DNA from: Zootoca vivipara
Lineage: Eukaryota
NCBI RefSeq assembly: GCF_963506605.1
Contig: NC_083276.1
Coordinates: forward strand, 11,594,001 to 11,658,000
Length of the DNA stretch: 64,000 nucleotides
Reading direction: 5' to 3'
Below, in pieces: positions 2,899 to 29,288 of the stretch. The notes under the pieces are model-generated. The model did no database searches, was not told the origin of the DNA, and was given only the letters and a program-made list of their open reading frames with translations. Position numbers and translations under genes: made by a program. Each line of letters opens with the position of its first letter. Within the stretch, counting starts at the first letter, position 1.

Positions 2899-3272
2899 TG
2901 AGTGGATGCCCTCAGTCTAAACTTCACAATGGTGAAGCTGTGGAGGAACCCCAGGCTCCTGGTCTGGAGGAGATGACTGATTCAACTAGCTAGTTGTTGT
3001 TGTTTTTGCCGAGATCTGCACATTTCCCAAGGCCTGTTGGAGATAATGTATACTGACTGGGAAATGTGGACAATTTACTCTTCGTGGATAGATTATGTGC
3101 ACATTCAAGGCCTTCTGAATGTGCGCTGTAGCTGGTCGTTATGCATTTTAACCCCTCCCTCCCTTTATAATGTAGTTTCTGTGGGCTCATTTAGAAGCCT
3201 AAACTGGAACTGCTGCCTCCCTCCCAATGCCCCTGACTTCAGAACGCAGGGGAGCTCAGAGAACGGTCTTTG

Positions 3273-3515
3273 ATAGAATCATAGAATTATAAAATTGGAA
3301 GGGATTCCAAGAGTCATCTAGTCCAACCCCCTGCAATGCAGGAATCTCAGCTAAAGCATCCGCGACAGATGGCCATCCAACCTCTGATAAAAACTTCCAA
3401 GGAAGGAGAGTCCACAACCTCCTGAGGGAGACTGTTCCACTGCCAAACAGCAAACAGCTCTTACTGTCAGAAAGTTCTTCCTGGTGTTCCTTTGAAATCT
3501 CCTTTCTTGTAACTC
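3273..3515 (-). mobile_element. CR1 LINE 3' fragment
   Basis: atagaatcatagaat tail in reverse; similar to the 3' end of the CR1 at 16400-16594. Confidence 0.7.
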
Positions 3516-3789
3516 AGGATTATCTCAATGTATCGGCAGATGTGGGAGGTGGAAATCTATAAGCCAAGGGTGGGGAATCTGTGGTTGCCCGGTTGTTGTT
3601 GGACTACAACTCCCATCACCCCCATCATCAGCTTATTTAATTTAATTTTTAATTTATTAAATGTGTAGACCGTCCTTCACCCAAAGATCTCAGGGCGATT
3701 CACAGCATACAAATACAAAAGAAGAAGATAAAATACATAATAAAAAAAAGAGAGCGAAGACCACAAAGGCCACAGGTTCTCTATCCTAG

Positions 3790-4026
<237 letters not shown>

Positions 4027-4828
4027 TAGACTTCCATGCACAAACCTACCTACCTTCCTTCTTTTGTTTGTTTATGGCACGGTTGAGATGAATGCAGGGC
4101 ACTAGAATGAGTGCAGGGGGGGGCATGATAGAGGTGTTATAAAATTATGCGAGAACTCCTGGACAACTAACAAAACGAAGCTGAATGTTGGAAAGTTCAG
4201 GACACACAGAAGAAAGCAATTTCTTAATGGAGCACATCGTTAAGCTATATGCTTCCACTAGATGTAGTGATAGCCACCAACTTGGGTGACTTCATAAGAG
4301 GATTATGCCTCTGGAAATCACAATTGGAGAAAGTGCTGTCACATTCAAGATCTTCCCCTAAGCATCTTTTCTGCCACTGTGAGAAAATGATGTTGGACTA
4401 GGCAACTTCTTCTTCTGTTACGTTCATTGAAATGTGCACCTGAAGCGGAAATCTCGAAACTTGGCTCGTTACAGATTTTGGTTCTTAATTTTGTCTCCTT
4501 TTTTCACACTTTTTAAATAAAGGAGACTGGTACGTGGCTGCTCTTAAATGTCAGCAGAAATATCTGCCCATTTGTAAGGTCAAAATATTGAGTTTTACTA
4601 CTACAAGGGGGCGGGTGGGGTGAAGCTTTCAAAAACCAAATGTAACTTTAAAAACCTTTAAATAGAAAAGGGGGGGGGCAAATGTAGAAACTTTGCCCCA
4701 GTTTATGTTTTAATATGGGAAGTTGAACAGATCTGGAACTAAACAGAAATTGCTATCACTGATAGAATAAACACATTCTCAGACCCTTGAGTATTTGAAT
4801 TACTAAACCTATCGTTCTTTATTACTAG

Positions 4829-4880
4829 GAAATCAGCTCTATTTTGAAGGAGCTCCGTCGAGTCCAGAAACAACTTGAAG
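4829..4880 (+). CDS. CEP170B: CEP170B coding exon (EISSILKELRRVQKQLE)
   Basis: tag acceptor, GT donor at 4881; conserved coiled-coil peptide of the CEP170 family. Confidence 0.92.
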
Positions 4881-5248
4881 GTTTGCCTTATTTTGACTTC
4901 CCTGTTTCTCTTTGGTTTGCGTTAAATGCAGTTTATTGTACTAAGAGCCGGGCTTGATCTACACTGACCTTTTTAAACGTCATTAGAGCAATATTACCTA
5001 TGCCGTTCTAAAACGTCACAAGGCATACTGCAAAGATTACATTCGTTACCTTATCGTTATTCCTCTGTAACAGCAGTTCCCCTTACTGCCCGGTTCCTGG
5101 TTGCTCTGCAGTGCCCTCTGGTGTCACATTTACTTTATTAACGTTCTTAGCAGAAAGTAACGTGACCCTTACGTTTTGAAAATCATCTCTTAACTCTTTC
5201 TTAACGTTATAAGAAATCCAGGCAGATGGGTGGGGTGTATAAATAATA

Positions 5249-5288
<40 letters not shown>

Positions 5289-5334
5289 CAGGAGTGTAGA
5301 TCTACCCACAGATAAAAGGGAAAGAAGAATGTAT

Positions 5335-5720
5335 GTACGTTTCCGAGCACAATTCAGAGTGTTGATGCTGACCTAATCAGAGCACGTCCCAGAATACCTG
5401 AAGGAGCGTCTCCACTCCCATCGTTCAGCCCGGACACTGAGGTCCAGCACCGAGGGCCTTCTGGCGGTTCCCTCACTGAGAGAAGTGAGGTTACAGGAAC
5501 CAGGCAGAGGGCCTTCTCGGTAGTGGCGCCCTCCCATCCGATGTCAAGGAAATAAACAACTACAGTATCTGACTTTTAGAAGACATCTGTTTAGGGAAGT
5601 TTTTAATGTTTGAAGTTTTATTGCTTTCTATTTATTATGATGATTAATCTTCTGCTGGAAGCCACCCAGAGTGGCTGGGGAAACCCAACCAGATGGGCAG
5701 GGTATAAATGATAAATTTTT
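5335..5720 (+). mobile_element. L2-clade LINE 3' fragment
   Basis: Reverse complement of the L2-family fragments elsewhere in the window. Confidence 0.7.
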
Positions 5721-5888
5721 ATTATATTATTATAGCGCCACCTGCTGCCCAGCTCCCTGCATTCTGCCCTACTAATCCCAACAACCTCCAGGTTTGGGAG
5801 ATGATGATAATGATGATGATAATAATAAATTTATTTATACCCCGCTCATCTGGTTGGGCCTCCCCAGTCACTCTGGGTGGCTCCCAAC

Positions 5889-5938
<50 letters not shown>
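5889..5938. repeat. (AAT)n microsatellite
   Basis: Direct reading; source of the poly-N and poly-L ORFs in the track. Confidence 0.95.
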
Positions 5939-5939
<1 letters not shown>

Positions 5940-6126
5940 CGATAAAACAGATAATACTTGACAAACAAAATAAAATAGAAGCCATTCATCTGCTTGACTG
6001 CCAGCCATCAAGTGTGAAGTAACTGGGAGAGAGAGAGGGAGAGGGAGAGAATGAGAATGTGTAGCCCTGTAGCCCTATAAATCCATGTTAAGGCTGCCTT
6101 GGCTTTCTCCCCCTTTTTTTCTGCAG

Positions 6127-6365
6127 TTATAAATGCCATCATTGACCCGAGTGGAAACTTGGATGTGCTCGCCAATAACAAAATGTCTTCTGCTACGCCA
6201 CAGTCTGTGGCGGCTAAAATCAGGACTGCTAACAACATTTCCGGGTCCATGTTGGAGGCGTTGTCGCCTGTCAAGAAGAGAAATTACGTGCAGAAATCAA
6301 ACTTTGGCTCTGCTAGCCTGCAGGATGCTACGTTTGTTCCAGATGGGGAGAAATACGTGATCTAG
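6127..6365 (+). CDS. CEP170B: CEP170B last coding exon (VINAIIDPSGNLDVL...FVPDGEKYVI*)
   Basis: Pyrimidine tract plus cag acceptor; G+TT=Val join; TAG at 6363-6365; ending resembles human CEP170B ...FLPDAERFLI. Confidence 0.93.
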
Positions 6366-8518
6366 CAAGAAAGTTTTCTATCGCTTTCCCTCTTGTATGT
6401 AATTTGCCGTGGCGTTAGTGTTGTGTACGAGTGGTTGTGGGCAAGTCCTTGTGGAGCAGTTGTTTAGATTGCTAACACATTGCACAAAAGAAAAGACAAC
6501 AAAACGAAAAGGTGCAATCTCTGATGTGTGAGCACAAGTGGCAGGCCTATGTATACGCCTTTTGGAAGGGGCAAAAATGGACGAGCACTGTGGAACAGCA
6601 CATATTCAGCACAGAGGCAAAAAGCAAGTGATGCATAATTTCTCCAATGTGCCATAGCAAACAGGCTTTGCGTATTCTTCACACTGTACTGCCGAAGCTC
6701 TGATATGTTATTGTATTTAGCCTGTTTATAGCTGTCTGTTTTAGTTGTATAGAGGCTCCATTTTGAAAATGTACCTTTTGGGGGCAGTGGCTGGCTGTTG
6801 CTGTATATTTAATTTTAAATACAAATCGTTAAATGGTTCAGCCAAAACTGATTCCCCCTCCCATGCTTGTCAGCTGAGCAATGCAGCGTGGAAGTCTTTT
6901 TTTCTTTTTCATTTCAGAGATCCAAGAGCAGTTAACTTGCAAACATCTCCAAAAAGGAAACCAAGATGACATTGAATCATTCCACTTCCAATCACACAGC
7001 TTTTATGATTCCACTGGGAATGAGTAATAAAGATTACAGATGATGGAGAGGCAGTGATTAAGTTTGCATTTTTGATTCCCTTATTGTAATCAGTAAAAAA
7101 AGAGAGAGAGAGAGAGAGGATGAAATTCAGGTGCAGAGGAGGAGGCAAATTAGTCACAAGGTCAGGATTTTGTATAGTGAAGTTGCCAAATTTGTACTAT
7201 TTCATGGCAGCTGCTTCATAACTAAGTTTTCAGGTGGTCAAAATGTGTTTTTAATGCAGTCCACAAAGTCTCCTGTTTACTGCATAGAATTCTGAAGGCA
7301 CTAAAGAATTGAGTATTCCATGTGCGAGCAATTAAGATTTTGATCATAACTCACCATCCTGTGCTTCTAAATCTCATTGACATGCATAGGAAGTTTAAGA
7401 GTGTAGGAGTTGAGCTGCTTTTTGCACTCATAGGAATCCTGTCTTGAGCCTCGTTCCTCACCCTGCGATGCATGCTAAATGGAGGCCTCCTTAATAGAGC
7501 TTTGTCTTGTGTTGCCTCCAACTTCCTTGGGTTTTCTCATGCAGATCTGTTGAGCCAGCAAGACCCTGGACTACACTCTTTTGTGAATGGCCAGCTTGTC
7601 AATCATTTGGTGATGGCCAGCAGGGCAGCGATATCACCGATCGCAGGCACGGCAGCTTCTGCAGTAACTCCTGGTCTCCCCAAAATGCAGGCTGGCACTA
7701 ATAAAAGTTGCCGCAAATCGTGGTGAGATTCCAACTTTTTACTGCCTTACGTTGATCGCATGAATGTGGATTTCAGGAGTCCGTCTTAGAAGCATCCCAC
7801 CTGGGGTTTCCATAGGTGGGTTGAGAGTTCACCCTCATGTTGTCTCTGTTACCTTATTTGCTCCCATTTTGTACGTTGTGTCAAGCATTCCTACCAAGAT
7901 GAATGGGGAGCTGGCAAATCCGGGCAAGCTACTGTATAATGGTGAATGTATTGCTCTCGCTCTCTCCCTGCACACGCACAAACAGCTGAAACCTCAGTTT
8001 ACTTCAAGCACTGTGGCCACCCTGTGACTGTTGAATCCAGATATGTGAGCTCTTCTGGCTAGTAAGAATTAAGTGAGTTGAGTGGCTGGCTTTTAAATAC
8101 AGTATTATTGAAATGATCTTATACTTCCACCAATGCAATCTCGGATAATGCCAAGGATAGTTTTGCAACAATTCTGAGGTGCATGCTAATAAAAACACAA
8201 TTTTAAAATTAATAATAATAATTTTAAAAATTCATTGTTTTCCACTCCCACTTGCCAAATTAGTGCTTGCTGACTGGGAGGGGGGGTGCACTTATTGAGA
8301 TGCCAGTTAATTTTTTTCTATTATAAAATTCCTCTTTTGCCTAAGTAGCTAAAAAAAATAAGGAACGTGCGTCTTTATTGTGAAAAAGACAGTACTGAGC
8401 TCTGCAGACATTTTGTGTTACAACTCCTGGGGGTTGATAGGAGTTGTAGGCCAAAACATCTGGAAGGCTGGTGAAGGCTAAGCTAGGTGGACTAATGATG
8501 CAAACCAGCACCACCTAT

Positions 8519-26956: not shown

Positions 26957-27157
26957 GTGAAAGAAGTCGGGGTTTTGATCAGCAACTGCAGCTGCTTAGC
27001 TAAGGATCTCTGGAAAACCTTCAAAACCTATTGGGATCTTGGGGAACCAAATGCCACCATCCCAACTCCATGGCCGAGCAATTATTCTACCAATATCAAC
27101 AGCCACAATCCTTTGGAAGTGCAGTTAAATGGAACCAGCACTGAAGCTTATTTTTCT
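26957..27157 (+). CDS. PLD4: PLD4 exon (VKEVGVLISNCSCLAKDLWKTFKTYW...AYFS)
   Basis: AG/GT boundaries; 201 nt, phase 0/0. Confidence 0.95.
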
Positions 27158-27230
27158 GTAAGCAGACAGTTCCTAAGCATGTTTTCCTCAGATTAACCCC
27201 ACTGAATTCAGTGGGATTTACTCTCTAGTA

Positions 27231-27715
27231 CAGTGTTTCTCAACCTTTTTTGGGCCAAGGCACACTTGTTCCATGAAAAAAATCACGAGGCACACCACCA
27301 TTAAAAAAGTTAAAAAATTTAACTCTGTGCCGCCCTATATTGACTATATAATTATGACTGTATGAAACACTTGCCAATTGCTGTGTTGGTTGCAATCTCC
27401 TGTAATAAGGCTTCACAAGCCGCTGATTTCTCTGCCAGCACAATCCTTTGCTCAGCAAGTTTCAGGTTGAGCTCATCCAGCCAGCTTCTTTAAGTTTGTC
27501 TAAAACCACCCTCCCGTGGTGGTGGCTGTTGAGAGCTGCGCTGGCCCCGCGTCGTGACCCGGCCGGCTTCCTTTCCGGCGGGTCAGTGTTGAATATTGGC
27601 GGCCGCCAGGCACGTGACAATGCAAATCGCCCTTCTCGTCGCCGCACGTCGCGGCACACCAGCCAGCGTCTCGCGGCACACTAGTGTGCCGCGGAACAGC
27701 GGTTGAGAAACGCTG
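27231..27715. mobile_element. hAT (Charlie-type) non-autonomous element
   Basis: TIR CAGTGTTTCTCAACC / GGTTGAGAAACGCTG; perfect TSD CTCTAGTA at 27223-27230 and 27716-27723. Confidence 0.92.
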
Positions 27716-27733
27716 CTCTAGTAAGTGTGCATA

Positions 27734-29048
27734 CCGTGTTTCCCCTTTTTTAATACGTAGTCAAAAAGTAAGGCATGGCAGGGTTTTTAATCGTTTGAGA
27801 AACGTAAGACATACCCCGAAAATAAGCCATACTTCCGCGACGTGCGGAGCAAGACCACCTAGCGCCCCAGCCAGCTAGCAGGACCCAGTACGCCGGCCGC
27901 AACAGGAGGAGGAAGCCTGCCGGGTTGGGTCGGTGCCCGGAAGCGGCGGCTGCTGCTGCAGCGCCGATAAAGCGTGCAGCAGTGCCGCACGGAACACTGA
28001 GGGCACAAGCCAGCAGGACCCAGCTCCTGCAATGCCGGCCGTGGCAGGAGGAGGAAGCCTGCCAGGTCGGGTTGGCGCTCGGAAGCGGCGGCGGCTGCAG
28101 CGCTGACAAAGCGCGAAGCAGCACCGCTCTCCCTCTCTGTGTGGGTGTCAGTCTCTTTCTGTGTGTGTGTGTGCGCGCGTCTCTCTCTCTCTCTCCCCCC
28201 CGTGCGTCTTTCTCTCCCCCCCCTGTGTGCGCGTCTGTCTCTCTCTGTTTGTGATCGCGTCTCTCTCCCCCCCCCCGACAGAGAAAAGGTGCCGCGCAGG
28301 TTCCTCTTCGGCTCGTCATTCAGCTGCCCCAGCCTCCTCGCCGAGAGCTGACGCCGCTCCTCTCCTCCTCCTTCCCTTTCCCCCCCCTCCTTCCGTCGGT
28401 CCGTCAGTTGGGGTTGCGCGCGCCAGAGCCGCAGTCCCAAGCCTCGTCCCCCTCGCGCTTCCCTCACTAACATCTCGGAGCAGGACGGGTCCCAGCCTCC
28501 CTCCTCATTCCCCGGCCAGCGTGAGAGAGCCCGGGGAGCAGCCTCTATACCTCTGCGCGCACACACACACGGCCGCCGCTGCCTTCGAAGCCATGGCAGC
28601 AAGCGGCAAGCCGAAGCAGGAGGAGAAGCACCTAAAGCTGCTGAGGGAGATGAGCAGCCTCCCAGTGCTCCCACCCAATCGCGAGTGCTTCGACTGCGAC
28701 CAGCGCAGTCCCACCTACACTGACATGACGGTGGGCAGCTTCGTGTATACCTCCTGCTCCACCTCACAGAGTGAAGTCCCCCCCGTCCCCCCCGTGTGCA
28801 CGTCTGTCTCCTAGGCAGGTGGCCATCCAGCCTCAGCTTAGAAGCCTCCAAGGAAGGAGAGCCCTTGATTCAGGATGGGGGAGGAGGGGAAACGGAGAGA
28901 ATAGAAGAGGCAGAAAATGCGCGCGGGAGAGAGCGCCAAGTTGTACCGGCACTTAAATAAAAAAAGACACCCCCTGAAAATAAGCCACCGTGTGCTTTTT
29001 TGAGGAAAAAAAGTTGTAAGACGGTGTCTTAAAAAGGGGGAAACACGG
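27734..29048. mobile_element. Tc1/mariner-superfamily (Tc2/pogo-type) non-autonomous transposon carrying captured host DNA
   Basis: TA|CCGTGTTTCCCCTTTTTTAA ... TTAAAAAGGGGGAAACACGG|TA; subterminal repeats AAGACA..CCCC.GAAAATAAGCCA near both ends. Confidence 0.9.
28593..28760 (+). pseudogene. AGFG1: Captured AGFG1 (HRB) exon-1 fragment inside the transposon
   Basis: GCCATGG then MAASGKPKQEEKHLKLLREMSSLPVLPPNRECFDCDQRSPTYTDMTVGSFVYTSCS, recognisably the AGFG1 ArfGAP N-terminus; third zinc-binding Cys is replaced by Tyr and there is a 3-aa insertion. Confidence 0.85.
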
Positions 29049-29148
29049 TAGGATTACAATGAAACCTTCTGTAGGAAATGTTTATCCTCATAGAAAAAAC
29101 ATGGGGATCAATAGAGGATGTATTAATTAAACTTCTCCTTTGCTCTAG

Positions 29149-29288
29149 GCTTCTCCTGCTTCCTTTTGTCCAGGGGGTCGCACTTTTGATCTTGTGGCAG
29201 TTCTCGATGTTATCTACGGTGCAGAAAAATTTGTCTATGTCTCCATTATGGATTATTTCCCTACGAGCCGCTTCAGACACCCACCAAG
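29149..29288 (+). CDS. PLD4: PLD4 exon (ASPASFCPGGRTFDL...SIMDYFPTSRFRHPP)
   Basis: AG/GT boundaries; homologous to PLD4 ASPPALCPQGRTRDL. Confidence 0.95.

What the first reader, a model, noticed from the sequence alone, without database searches (positions are those of the whole stretch)
27732..29050. Pack-TIR: a Tc2/pogo-type DNA transposon carrying the CpG-island first exon of AGFG1, inserted sense inside PLD4
Seen: a 1315-bp element with ~20-bp TIRs (CCGTGTTTCCCC...), TA duplications and paired subterminal repeats. It has no transposase. Its interior is CpG-rich and contains a Kozak ATG (28593) opening a 73-aa ORF whose first ~56 aa are the AGFG1 ArfGAP N-terminus. Homology stops about where AGFG1 exon 1 ends, and there is no exon 2 and no poly(A), so this looks like DNA-level capture rather than a processed pseudogene. 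The cargo is a mosaic: a ~140-bp internal duplication (27866-28115) and a CR1 scrap (~28819-28864) are also inside. The third zinc-ligand Cys is now Tyr. Known: gene-fragment capture by TIR elements (Pack-MULEs) is common in plants and rare in vertebrates. Inference: this family may be spreading a housekeeping promoter/first-exon module. Here it ends 100 bp upstream of PLD4 exon 8 in the same orientation and could drive chimeric or truncated PLD4 transcripts.
Basis: partly seen in the sequence, partly recalled or inferred. Interest (0 to 1): 0.85.

Follow-up and report, generated by a model that had tools for sequence, protein, structure and literature searches.

The report
Lizard transposon carrying spliced AGFG1 start
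A 1.3-kb cut-and-paste transposon in a PLD4 intron of a lizard carries a dead, intron-less copy of the start of the AGFG1 gene, so the piece came from RNA, and it appears to have multiplied to tens of copies, which is rare in vertebrates.

Summary
The element is real. It is 1315 bp, with 23-nt terminal inverted repeats (25 nt counting the TAs; 23 of 25 pair), TA on both sides and no transposase. It lies in sense orientation in a PLD3/4-type (PLD4) intron, 98 bp upstream of the next exon. Its GC-rich interior holds the AGFG1 N-terminus (PDB 2olm, E 1.6e-20), with the third zinc Cys changed to Tyr.

Directly after exon-1 residue 53 come the exon-2 residues PPHRVKS, frame-shifted across a 23-nt deletion and with no intron between (chance about 5e-6). 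The cargo therefore passed through spliced RNA.

AGFG1 similarity covers only 28283-28779, from about 310 nt upstream of the ATG to the start of exon 2. The CpG-rich sequence further upstream is not AGFG1. Part of it (27832-28055) is kept by shorter, more abundant family members.

Read data show thousands of copies of the arms. The AGFG1 block sits at about 50-130 times single-copy depth, with at least 17 distinct contigs. No RNA evidence links this copy to transcription or to PLD4 exons. The Tc2/pogo assignment could not be tested.

The scan had already found a sister AGFG1 copy on other DNA of this genome (s1-848836), read the same way, plus many other gene-start captures.

Verdict: a decayed passenger, and a new variant (RNA-derived, amplified) of the known animal Pack-TIR kind.

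The parts
27732..27733 (.). Left TA (target-site duplication typical of Tc1/mariner/pogo-type elements).
   Evidence: In one search, 99 RNA reads from many family copies stop matching exactly before 27732, with diverse flanks (agreement 0.54).
27734..27831 (+). Left arm of the transposon backbone. The terminal inverted repeat is 27734-27756. A subterminal direct-repeat unit lies at 27806-27829.
   Evidence: I1, D4; summed depth 337,000 against 58 in the unique flank. Joints 27831->28959 and 27831->28965 in DNA contigs and 52 RNA reads define the end of the arm.
27832..28127 (+). GC-rich block of two roughly 120-nt tandem units (27873-27988 and 28008-28127). It is not AGFG1. Its first part (27832-28055) is also kept by more abundant, shorter family members.
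   Evidence: depth 15,000-59,000. Joints 28055/28056->28959. 110 RNA reads end before 28959 with a consensus resembling 28027-28056.
28128..28282 (+). Low-complexity CT/GT-rich stretch made of roughly 85-nt units carrying a 24-nt motif (28132, 28218).
   Evidence: D2, D3.
28283..28592 (+). Sequence similar to the region 310 nt upstream of the AGFG1 start codon (5' UTR, possibly reaching the transcription start).
   Evidence: a native-type upstream+exon-1 reading frame (P0006) aligns collinearly from -309 nt onward, and nothing credible aligns further upstream; a contig of the related organism B starts matching at 28285 with unlike sequence before it. Strand-specific RNA reads from another locus cover 28412 onward, and 5 of about 10 molecules begin at 28450.
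28593..28760 (+). AGFG1 exon-1 coding part, residues 1-53. It carries a 9-nt insertion (PVL), six substitutions, and Cys->Tyr at the third zinc ligand.
28759..28779 (+). First codons of AGFG1 exon 2 (residues 61-67, PPHRVKS), in a shifted frame. A 23-nt deletion removes residues 54-60 and the exon 1/2 junction. No intron is present.
   Evidence: genomic ORFs P0002 and P0003 stop after ...SGIL, while P0005 continues RGLNPPHRVKS. P0006 also stops after ...SGIL; 7/7 identity abutting the exon-1 match; chance 1 in 200,000.
28787..28810 (+). Third copy of the 24-nt low-complexity motif (92% to 28218-28241), so the AGFG1 block sits between copies of this motif.
   Evidence: (D3).
28816..28861 (+). 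46-nt fragment of a very abundant interspersed repeat. CR1-like by recollection; its class was not tested.
   Evidence: about 150 contigs run on unlike on both sides, at 28816/28820 and 28861; longer relatives at 3366-3413 and 23841-23888.
28862..28958 (+). Purine-rich filler of unknown origin.
   Evidence: No match.
28959..29048 (+). Right arm of the transposon backbone. The terminal inverted repeat is 29026-29048. A subterminal direct-repeat unit lies at 28964-28987.
   Evidence: depth 540,000-710,000, with joints into 28959/28965.
29049..29050 (.). Right TA.
26957..27157 (+). Upstream host exon (PLD3/4 family, PLD4 residues 150-216 of chain 9vbj).
29149..29288 (+). Downstream host exon (PLD4 residues 217-263 of chain 9vbj), same strand as the AGFG1 ORF.

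Best explanation
This is one decayed copy of a non-autonomous cut-and-paste transposon. It has a TA target, 23-nt inverted ends and a backbone of about 190 bp, and belongs to a family with thousands of copies in this lizard.

Its interior is a patchwork. Inside that patchwork is a 497-bp piece of AGFG1 messenger RNA: about 310 nt of leader, the first coding exon, and the first codons of exon 2 without intron 1.

Most likely path (inferred):
1. An element copy was broken or incompletely re-synthesised during repair after excision.
2. The gap was closed with filler pieces: a low-complexity sequence, a reverse-transcribed AGFG1 RNA patch, a 46-nt scrap of an abundant repeat, and others.
3. Because both ends stayed intact, the composite was then moved by the family's transposase acting in trans. 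It multiplied to tens of copies, one of which landed at a TA in this PLD4 intron.

The copy here is a passenger. Its reading frame is broken, a zinc ligand is lost, and no transcription from it was seen.

Shown: the element, its family, the AGFG1 identity, the missing intron, the multicopy state.
Inferred: the repair-patch mechanism and mobilisation as one unit.
For: Element and family:
- TIRs and TA flanks.
- Arm depth 337,000-710,000 against 57-59 in the unique flanks.
- 99 RNA reads break off at 27732 with diverse flanks.
- Shorter members join 27831 to 28959, and 28055/28056 to 28959.
- No transposase domain.

AGFG1 identity: PDB 2olm E 1.6e-20, Pfam ArfGap.

Missing intron:
- ORFs P0002, P0003 and P0006, read as genomic because they stop there, end right after ...SGIL. 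P0005 continues RGLNPPHRVKS.
- In the element PPHRVKS abuts residue 53. The chance of that is 1 in 200,000.

Limits of the AGFG1 block: 28283/28285 from two independent sources (organism B contig; P0006 collinear from -309 nt).

Patchwork: 24-nt motif on both sides of the block, a 46-nt repeat scrap, no poly(A), no clean duplication.

Multicopy cargo:
- Depth 2,900-7,800 over 28244-28747, which is 50-134 times the flank.
- Up to 17 distinct contigs at one variant place.
- Deletion variants inside the cargo (28568->28852, 28650->28732).
- A sister copy on another piece of the genome (not checked by me).

Precedent for RNA-derived patches without poly(A) or duplication at repaired breaks: PMC5110952.

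Excision activity of CCG...CGG-ended elements: TACCGGTA occurs 2 times against 0.16 expected.
Against: - In this copy the exon 1/2 junction itself is deleted (23 nt), so the splice is inferred from its two sides, not read directly.
- The native AGFG1 locus and mRNA of this species were not available. The exon boundary comes from ORFs of other species.
- Summed contig depth is only a rough proxy for copy number. No contig was shown that links the AGFG1 block to both arms at a second locus.
- Shorter members could be either parents or deletion derivatives.
- Strand-specific RNA reads pile up from 28450. If that is the main start site of the native gene, 28283-28449 would lie upstream of it, which fits DNA-level copying better unless the promoter has dispersed starts.
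- The direct cDNA-patch route cannot be told apart from copying a pre-existing retrocopy.
Confidence: 0.6

Rival explanations
1. The RNA step was separate and earlier. A retrocopy of AGFG1 already lay somewhere in the genome, and the transposon copied its 5' part at the DNA level, by the same template switching that gave this genome's other gene-start captures.
For: - The intron-less state fits equally well.
- Other elements noted in this genome carry exon 1 plus part of intron 1 of other genes, that is, DNA-level captures (unchecked notes).
- Animal Pack-TIRs are thought to arise by DNA-templated gap filling or fork switching (PMC8277862).
Against: - LINE-made retrocopies are usually truncated at the 5' end and keep the 3' end.
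- A silent retrocopy lacks the open promoter chromatin that might explain a 5'-end capture bias.
- No such retrocopy was seen, though none could be searched for.
Confidence: 0.25
2. Genomic DNA of the AGFG1 promoter and first exon was captured, and the family spreads a working housekeeping promoter and first-exon module that can drive chimeric PLD4 transcripts.
For: - The interior meets CpG-island sequence criteria.
- Similarity to a native-type locus reaches 310 nt upstream of the ATG, beyond the place where strand-specific RNA reads begin (28450).
- Sense orientation, 98 bp before a PLD4 exon.
Against: - Exon-2 codons follow exon 1 without intron 1.
- There is no similarity to the native-type locus further upstream than -310.
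- The RNA run has depth 0 on both PLD4 exons and no listed joint into 29149.
- Every RNA read listed at variant positions 28457-28580 carries differences from this copy.
- The ORF is broken.
Confidence: 0.07
3. The composite never moved as a unit. An AGFG1-derived patch and other filler were inserted in place into a transposon already sitting in this intron. The extra depth comes from unrelated AGFG1 retrocopies and GC-rich look-alikes.
For: - No contig shown bridges the cargo and both arms at another site.
- Most animal Pack-TIRs are single-copy (PMC8277862).
Against: - Depth is similar (5,300-7,800) across the non-coding parts of the block, 28244-28579.
- Deletion variants join the leader to the filler beyond the repeat scrap (28568->28852), an arrangement specific to this composite.
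- A TIR-flanked AGFG1 copy of 1372 nt was noted elsewhere in the genome.
Confidence: 0.05

Closest known systems
Animal Pack-TIRs (Tan et al. 2021, Nat Commun, PMC8277862)
   Same: A TIR DNA transposon with a host-gene fragment between intact ends. TcMariner-type elements account for 115 of their 370 cases, and 5' UTR fragments occur among their examples. They often lie in introns of host genes.
   Different: Their pipeline discarded intron-less copies of multi-exon genes, so RNA-derived cargo is outside their set. Only 4 of 370 were multicopy, with three copies in the example shown. Here depth suggests tens of copies. No lizard is mentioned in their main text.
Rice and other plant Pack-MULEs (e.g. 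PMC5861414)
   Same: Non-autonomous elements that package gene fragments, prefer GC-rich sequence, build mosaics and amplify.
   Different: They belong to the Mutator superfamily with 8-11-bp duplications and long TIRs, occur in plants, and their capture is generally DNA-level.
Class 2 templated sequence insertions: RNA-derived patches at repaired double-strand breaks (Onozawa and Aplan, PMC5110952)
   Same: A short reverse-transcribed piece of a transcript, sometimes with spliced exons, inserted without poly(A) tail or target duplication.
   Different: Those are insertions at ordinary chromosomal breaks in human cells and genomes. Here the patch lies inside a transposon that afterwards multiplied. 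The link is by analogy only.
Processed pseudogene (LINE-mediated retrocopy)
   Same: Loss of intron 1; decayed reading frame.
   Different: No poly(A), no 3' part of the mRNA (only the first roughly 500 nt), no flanking duplication of its own, and it is enclosed by TIR-element arms.
Sister copy in this genome (scan note s1-848836) and other gene-start captures there (TRIM24, ATXN7L2, IQSEC2, BMP8-like, OSBPL10, EPB41L4B)
   Same: Same species. The sister is a TA-type element with an AGFG1 5' end, read by another agent as intron-less and multiplied. The other captures also carry CpG-rich first exons.
   Different: I could not read those loci. Several of the other captures are reported to include part of intron 1 (DNA-level), unlike AGFG1.

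Membership tests
Tc1/mariner/pogo superfamily, non-autonomous member | TA target-site duplication | tested here: met
   TA on both sides. Reads from many copies match from the T of the TA at 27732 and diverge before it.
Tc1/mariner/pogo superfamily, non-autonomous member | Terminal inverted repeats shared by a multicopy family | tested here: met
   The repeat arms pair at 23 of 25 positions, counting the flanking TA. Arm depth is about 5,800-12,000 times the unique flank.
Tc1/mariner/pogo superfamily, non-autonomous member | An autonomous partner with a DDE/D transposase and matching ends | not testable with these tools
   No host-genome collection was available. None is present in the window. 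The metagenome scan gave 7 chance hits and the viral scan gave 0.
Tc1/mariner/pogo superfamily, non-autonomous member | Excision footprints (TA + end bases + TA) | tested here: inconclusive
   TACCGGTA 2 against 0.16 expected. TACCGTA 4 against 1.27 expected. Suggestive, but not tied to this family.
   No repeat library and no autonomous copy were available.
Pack-TIR as defined by Tan et al. 2021 | TE sequence with TIRs on both sides of internal non-TE sequence | tested here: met
Pack-TIR as defined by Tan et al. 2021 | An identifiable parental gene elsewhere | tested here: met
   AGFG1 by protein and by its upstream region. The native locus of this species was not seen.
Pack-TIR as defined by Tan et al. 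2021 | Captured piece is not an intron-less copy of a multi-exon gene (their filter against retroduplicates) | tested here: not met
   Exon-2 codons follow exon 1 without an intron. It works like a Pack-TIR but would be filtered out of that catalogue.
Processed pseudogene | Intron loss | tested here: met
Processed pseudogene | Poly(A) tail, 3' end of the mRNA, flanking target duplication | tested here: not met
   The AGFG1 match ends at 28779 after 7 exon-2 codons. No A-run follows. Only an imperfect 24-nt motif recurs, 44 nt before and 8 nt after the block.
CpG island | GC above 0.5-0.55, CpG o/e above 0.6, length above 500 bp | tested here: met
   27832-28958: GC 0.65, o/e 0.75, 1127 bp. Methylation state was not tested.

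The most novel reading that the evidence does not exclude
In this lacertid lizard, active TA-targeting (and hAT) miniature transposons behave like a vertebrate counterpart of rice Pack-MULEs. They repeatedly package GC-rich gene starts and amplify them to tens of copies, seeding CpG-island-like sequence into other genes. In the AGFG1 case the packaged piece is an RNA-templated repair patch.
Probability: 0.35. Interest if true: 0.75.

Novelty: new variant of a known kind. Interest (0 to 1): 0.55.

Why it matters
Gene-fragment capture by cut-and-paste transposons is known in animals, but it is reported as almost always single-copy. The one large survey filtered out intron-less cargo by design.

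A TIR element whose cargo came from spliced RNA and then multiplied would join two duplication routes usually treated apart, RNA-based and DNA-transposon-based. Together with the many sister captures noted in this genome, it would make this lizard a natural system for studying how transposons acquire and spread gene starts and CpG-rich sequence.

For PLD4 itself, the insertion is most likely neutral intron ballast.

Tried and rejected
- **Metagenome scan** for the terminus (20-nt pattern): 7 hits, none with a TA flank, a partner repeat or further similarity. These are chance matches.
- **Viral contig scan:** 0 hits.
- **Rfam** on 27100-29200: only sub-threshold noise.
- **Pfam** on the long GC-rich ORFs of both strands: nothing except ArfGap and one sub-threshold UreF hit.
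- **First protein search** with the 73-aa ORF: only native AGFG1 exon-1 fragments from other vertebrates, no sister-copy ORFs.
- **The search of earlier findings by sequence:** blank, which means nothing according to the operators.
The DNA of the native-type contigs behind P0002 and P0006 could not be fetched, so the upstream comparison had to be made at the level of translated frames.
- **Chimeric retrocopy idea** (reverse transcriptase jumping from a CR1 RNA to AGFG1 mRNA): considered and dropped. The repeat scrap is an internal 46-nt piece, not a 3' end.
- **Clean target duplication around the AGFG1 block:** not found. Only a recurring low-complexity motif is present.
- **Empty site in the relative (organism B):** no contig covers the intron flanks, so nothing can be said.
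- **Strand calibration of the RNA run:** impossible, because the PLD4 exons have no reads.

The two PLD exons were searched separately by reference. I did not build or search a joined spliced model.

Full report
**1. What is there**

Window 27732-29050 reads TA, then a 1315-bp element, then TA.
- The two ends form the longest inverted repeat in the region: 25 nt counting the TA, with 23 of 25 positions complementary.
- The 12-nt terminus occurs nowhere else in the 64 kb.
- No ORF on either strand carries a transposase domain.
- The interior, 27832-28958, has GC 0.65 and CpG o/e 0.75. The window as a whole has 0.45 and 0.41.

**2. Host context**

- 26957-27157 translates to PLD3/4-family residues. 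It matches PLD4 chain 9vbj residues 150-216 at E 5e-17, and PLD3 chains score marginally better.
- 29149-29288 translates to the next residues, 217-263. PLD4 scores E 5e-14 and PLD3 2.6e-10.
- These are therefore consecutive exons on the + strand, and the element lies in sense orientation in the intron 27158-29148.
- I searched the two exons separately by reference and did not join them.
- The same intron holds a second transposon, 27231-27715. It has hAT-type ends and a perfect 8-bp duplication (CTCTAGTA at 27223-27230 and 27716-27723), read, and it is extremely abundant.
- Without the two insertions the intron would be about 180 bp instead of 1,991 bp.

**3. The AGFG1 piece**

- The ORF from 28593 matches the N-terminus of AGFG1. 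PDB 2olm ('nucleoporin-like protein RIP') gives E 1.6e-20, and Pfam ArfGap scores above its cut-off.
- Against sauropsid-type AGFG1 fragments it is 86% identical over residues 1-53. It has a 3-residue insertion, and the third zinc-binding Cys is replaced by Tyr.

**4. Exon 2 is present and the intron is not**

- Three reading frames stop immediately after ...SCSGIL (residue 56): P0002 (seen on 65 contigs), P0003 and P0006. I take them to be called on genomic contigs because they stop there.
- A longer model, P0005, continues RGLNPPHRVKSISM.
- This places the exon 1/exon 2 boundary after residue 56. That is an inference from other species.
- In the element, residues 1-53 end at 28760. PPHRVKS (residues 61-67) is encoded at 28759-28779 in a shifted frame, at 7/7 identity.
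- In 200,000 random 60-nt sequences with the cargo's composition, an exact 7-residue match to the next 40 AGFG1 residues occurred once.
- So 23 nt spanning the junction are deleted in this copy, both sides of the junction are present, and intron 1 is absent.
- The fragment therefore passed through spliced RNA.
- It agrees with what another agent concluded for a sister copy on another piece of this genome (s1-848836). That note prompted me to look. I could not read that locus.

**5. Limits of the AGFG1 block**

- *Downstream:* the match ends at 28779. No poly(A) follows.
- *Upstream:* P0006 is a reading frame running through the upstream region of a native-type AGFG1 locus into exon 1. It aligns collinearly to the element from 309 nt before its ATG, which corresponds to window 28283 (E 2e-37 and 6e-5 in two frames). 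Its 127 further-upstream residues find nothing credible.
- *Independent support:* a contig of a related organism (B) starts matching at 28285, with at least 255 unlike letters before it.
- The block is 28283-28779. Whether -310 is a transcription start is not known.
- The CpG-rich 27832-28282 is not AGFG1.

**6. The rest of the interior is a patchwork**

- Two roughly 120-nt tandem units lie at 27873-27988 and 28008-28127.
- A CT/GT-rich stretch follows. Its 24-nt motif recurs just after the AGFG1 block, at 28787-28810 (92% identical).
- A 46-nt scrap sits at 28816-28861. About 150 contigs continue unlike on both sides of it, so it comes from a very abundant repeat. Longer relatives lie at 3366-3413 and 23841-23888. 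The label 'CR1' rests on my recollection only.
- The last 97 nt are unassigned.

**7. Family and copy number** (one DNA contig set, one relative, one raw RNA run, one probable RNA contig set; likeness 80 or more)

| Region | Summed contig depth |
|---|---|
| Unique flanks | 57-59 |
| Left arm | 337,000 |
| Right arm | 540,000-710,000 |
| 27824-28243 | 15,000-59,000 |
| 28244-28747 (AGFG1 block and its lead-in) | 2,900-7,800 (50-134 times the flank) |

- Up to 17 distinct contigs cover one variant place (28331).
- Joints show shorter members: 27831 joined to 28959 or 28965 (contigs plus 52 RNA reads), and 28055/28056 joined to 28959.
- 110 RNA reads end before 28959 with a consensus resembling 28027-28056.
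- Deletion variants occur inside the cargo (28568->28852, 28650->28732).
- Summed depth is only a rough proxy for copy number, as the tool warns. Together these results indicate a backbone family of thousands of copies, a sub-family of hundreds that keeps 27832-28055, and tens of copies with the AGFG1 block.
- Whether the shorter forms are parents or deletion derivatives is open. This copy's second unit is more complete than theirs, which hints at deletion.

**8. Expression**

- In the raw RNA run both PLD4 exons have depth 0, and no joint into 29149 is listed. The idea of chimeric PLD4 transcripts has no support there, but it is not excluded for other tissues.
- Reads over 28412-28747 all have the same mate orientation.
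- At every variant position listed between 28457 and 28580, all of these reads differ from this copy. That is 12 positions in 124 nt, and six of them are absent from all DNA contigs.
- Five of about ten molecules begin at 28450.
- I read these as transcripts of one other locus, probably the native AGFG1 gene. This is an inference. The library's strand convention could not be calibrated.
- A 120-nt contig of a probable RNA run matches 28602-28720 with 2 differences. That may be a sister copy or DNA carry-over.

**9. Mechanism**

- *Shown:* an intact-ended non-autonomous element, patchwork filler, an RNA-derived piece without poly(A) or a duplication of its own, and a multicopy state.
- *Inferred:* the filler was acquired while a broken or half-copied element was being repaired, and trans-mobilisation followed.
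- *Precedent:* RNA-derived patches, some with spliced exons and with no poly(A) or duplication, are described at repaired breaks in human cells and genomes (PMC5110952).
- *Main rival:* DNA-level copying from a pre-existing retrocopy.
- TACCGGTA occurs twice in the window against 0.16 expected. TACCGTA occurs 4 times against 1.27 expected. This fits excision footprints of elements with CCG...CGG ends, as other notes of the scan suggest, but it is not specific to this family.

**10. Comparison with what is known**

- Tan et al. 2021 (PMC8277862) catalogued 370 Pack-TIRs in 100 animal genomes, 115 of them TcMariner-type.
- They found only 4 multicopy cases, and they discarded intron-less captures by design.
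- This element works like a Pack-TIR but fails that one catalogue criterion, and its copy number is unusual.
- Rice Pack-MULEs share the preference for GC-rich sequence (PMC5861414).
- The scan holds some 70 notes on similar captures in this genome. The phenomenon is genome-wide there, and this particular family was already found on other DNA.

**11. Limits**

- No host-genome collection was available.
- The Tc2/pogo label, the exon number, the empty site in relatives, methylation and the autonomous partner remain untested.

**Verdict.** The feature is real. It is wrong in mechanism: the cargo is RNA-derived, promoter inclusion is not shown, and there is no sign of activity. I class it as a new variant of a known kind, of moderate interest.

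Noticed in passing
window 27223-27723: A second non-autonomous transposon lies 9-16 bp upstream. It is 485 bp (27231-27715), has hAT-type ends (CAGTGTTTCTCAACC...) and a perfect 8-bp duplication, CTCTAGTA. It is the most abundant sequence in the stretch, with summed depth up to 1.6 million against 58. Common internal-deletion variants join about 27377 to about 27571. It looks SPIN-like by recollection only.
   Followed up: partly
window 27158-29148: The PLD4 intron is 1,991 bp, of which about 1,810 bp are the two transposon insertions. The ancestral intron would be about 180 bp.
   Followed up: partly
window 18833-18840 and 63729-63736: TACCGGTA occurs twice against 0.16 expected from shuffles (0 of 100 shuffles reach 2). 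TACCGTA occurs 4 times against 1.27 expected. These are candidate excision footprints of TA-targeting elements with CCG...CGG ends.
   Followed up: partly
window 28412-28747 (reads, not the window copy): Strand-specific RNA reads map here. About half of the molecules begin at 28450. At 12 positions in 124 nt all of them differ from this copy, and six of those differences are absent from all DNA contigs. They probably come from the native AGFG1 mRNA. Upstream, at 28328-28411, reads lie in both orientations.
   Followed up: partly
window 3300-3500 and 23780-24120: Longer copies of the abundant interspersed repeat whose 46-nt scrap sits inside the element.
   Followed up: partly
window 26957-27157: This host exon scores marginally better against PLD3 than PLD4 structures (E 2.4e-18 against 5.4e-17), while the next exon clearly favours PLD4. 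The gene name rests on that second exon and on the neighbouring AHNAK2 noted by the first stage.
   Followed up: no
window 28027-28103: Each roughly 120-nt unit of the GC-rich block contains an ATG in a good context that opens a short basic reading frame (MPAVAGGGSLPGRVGARKRRRLQR). It could be the remnant of an earlier captured gene start.
   Followed up: no
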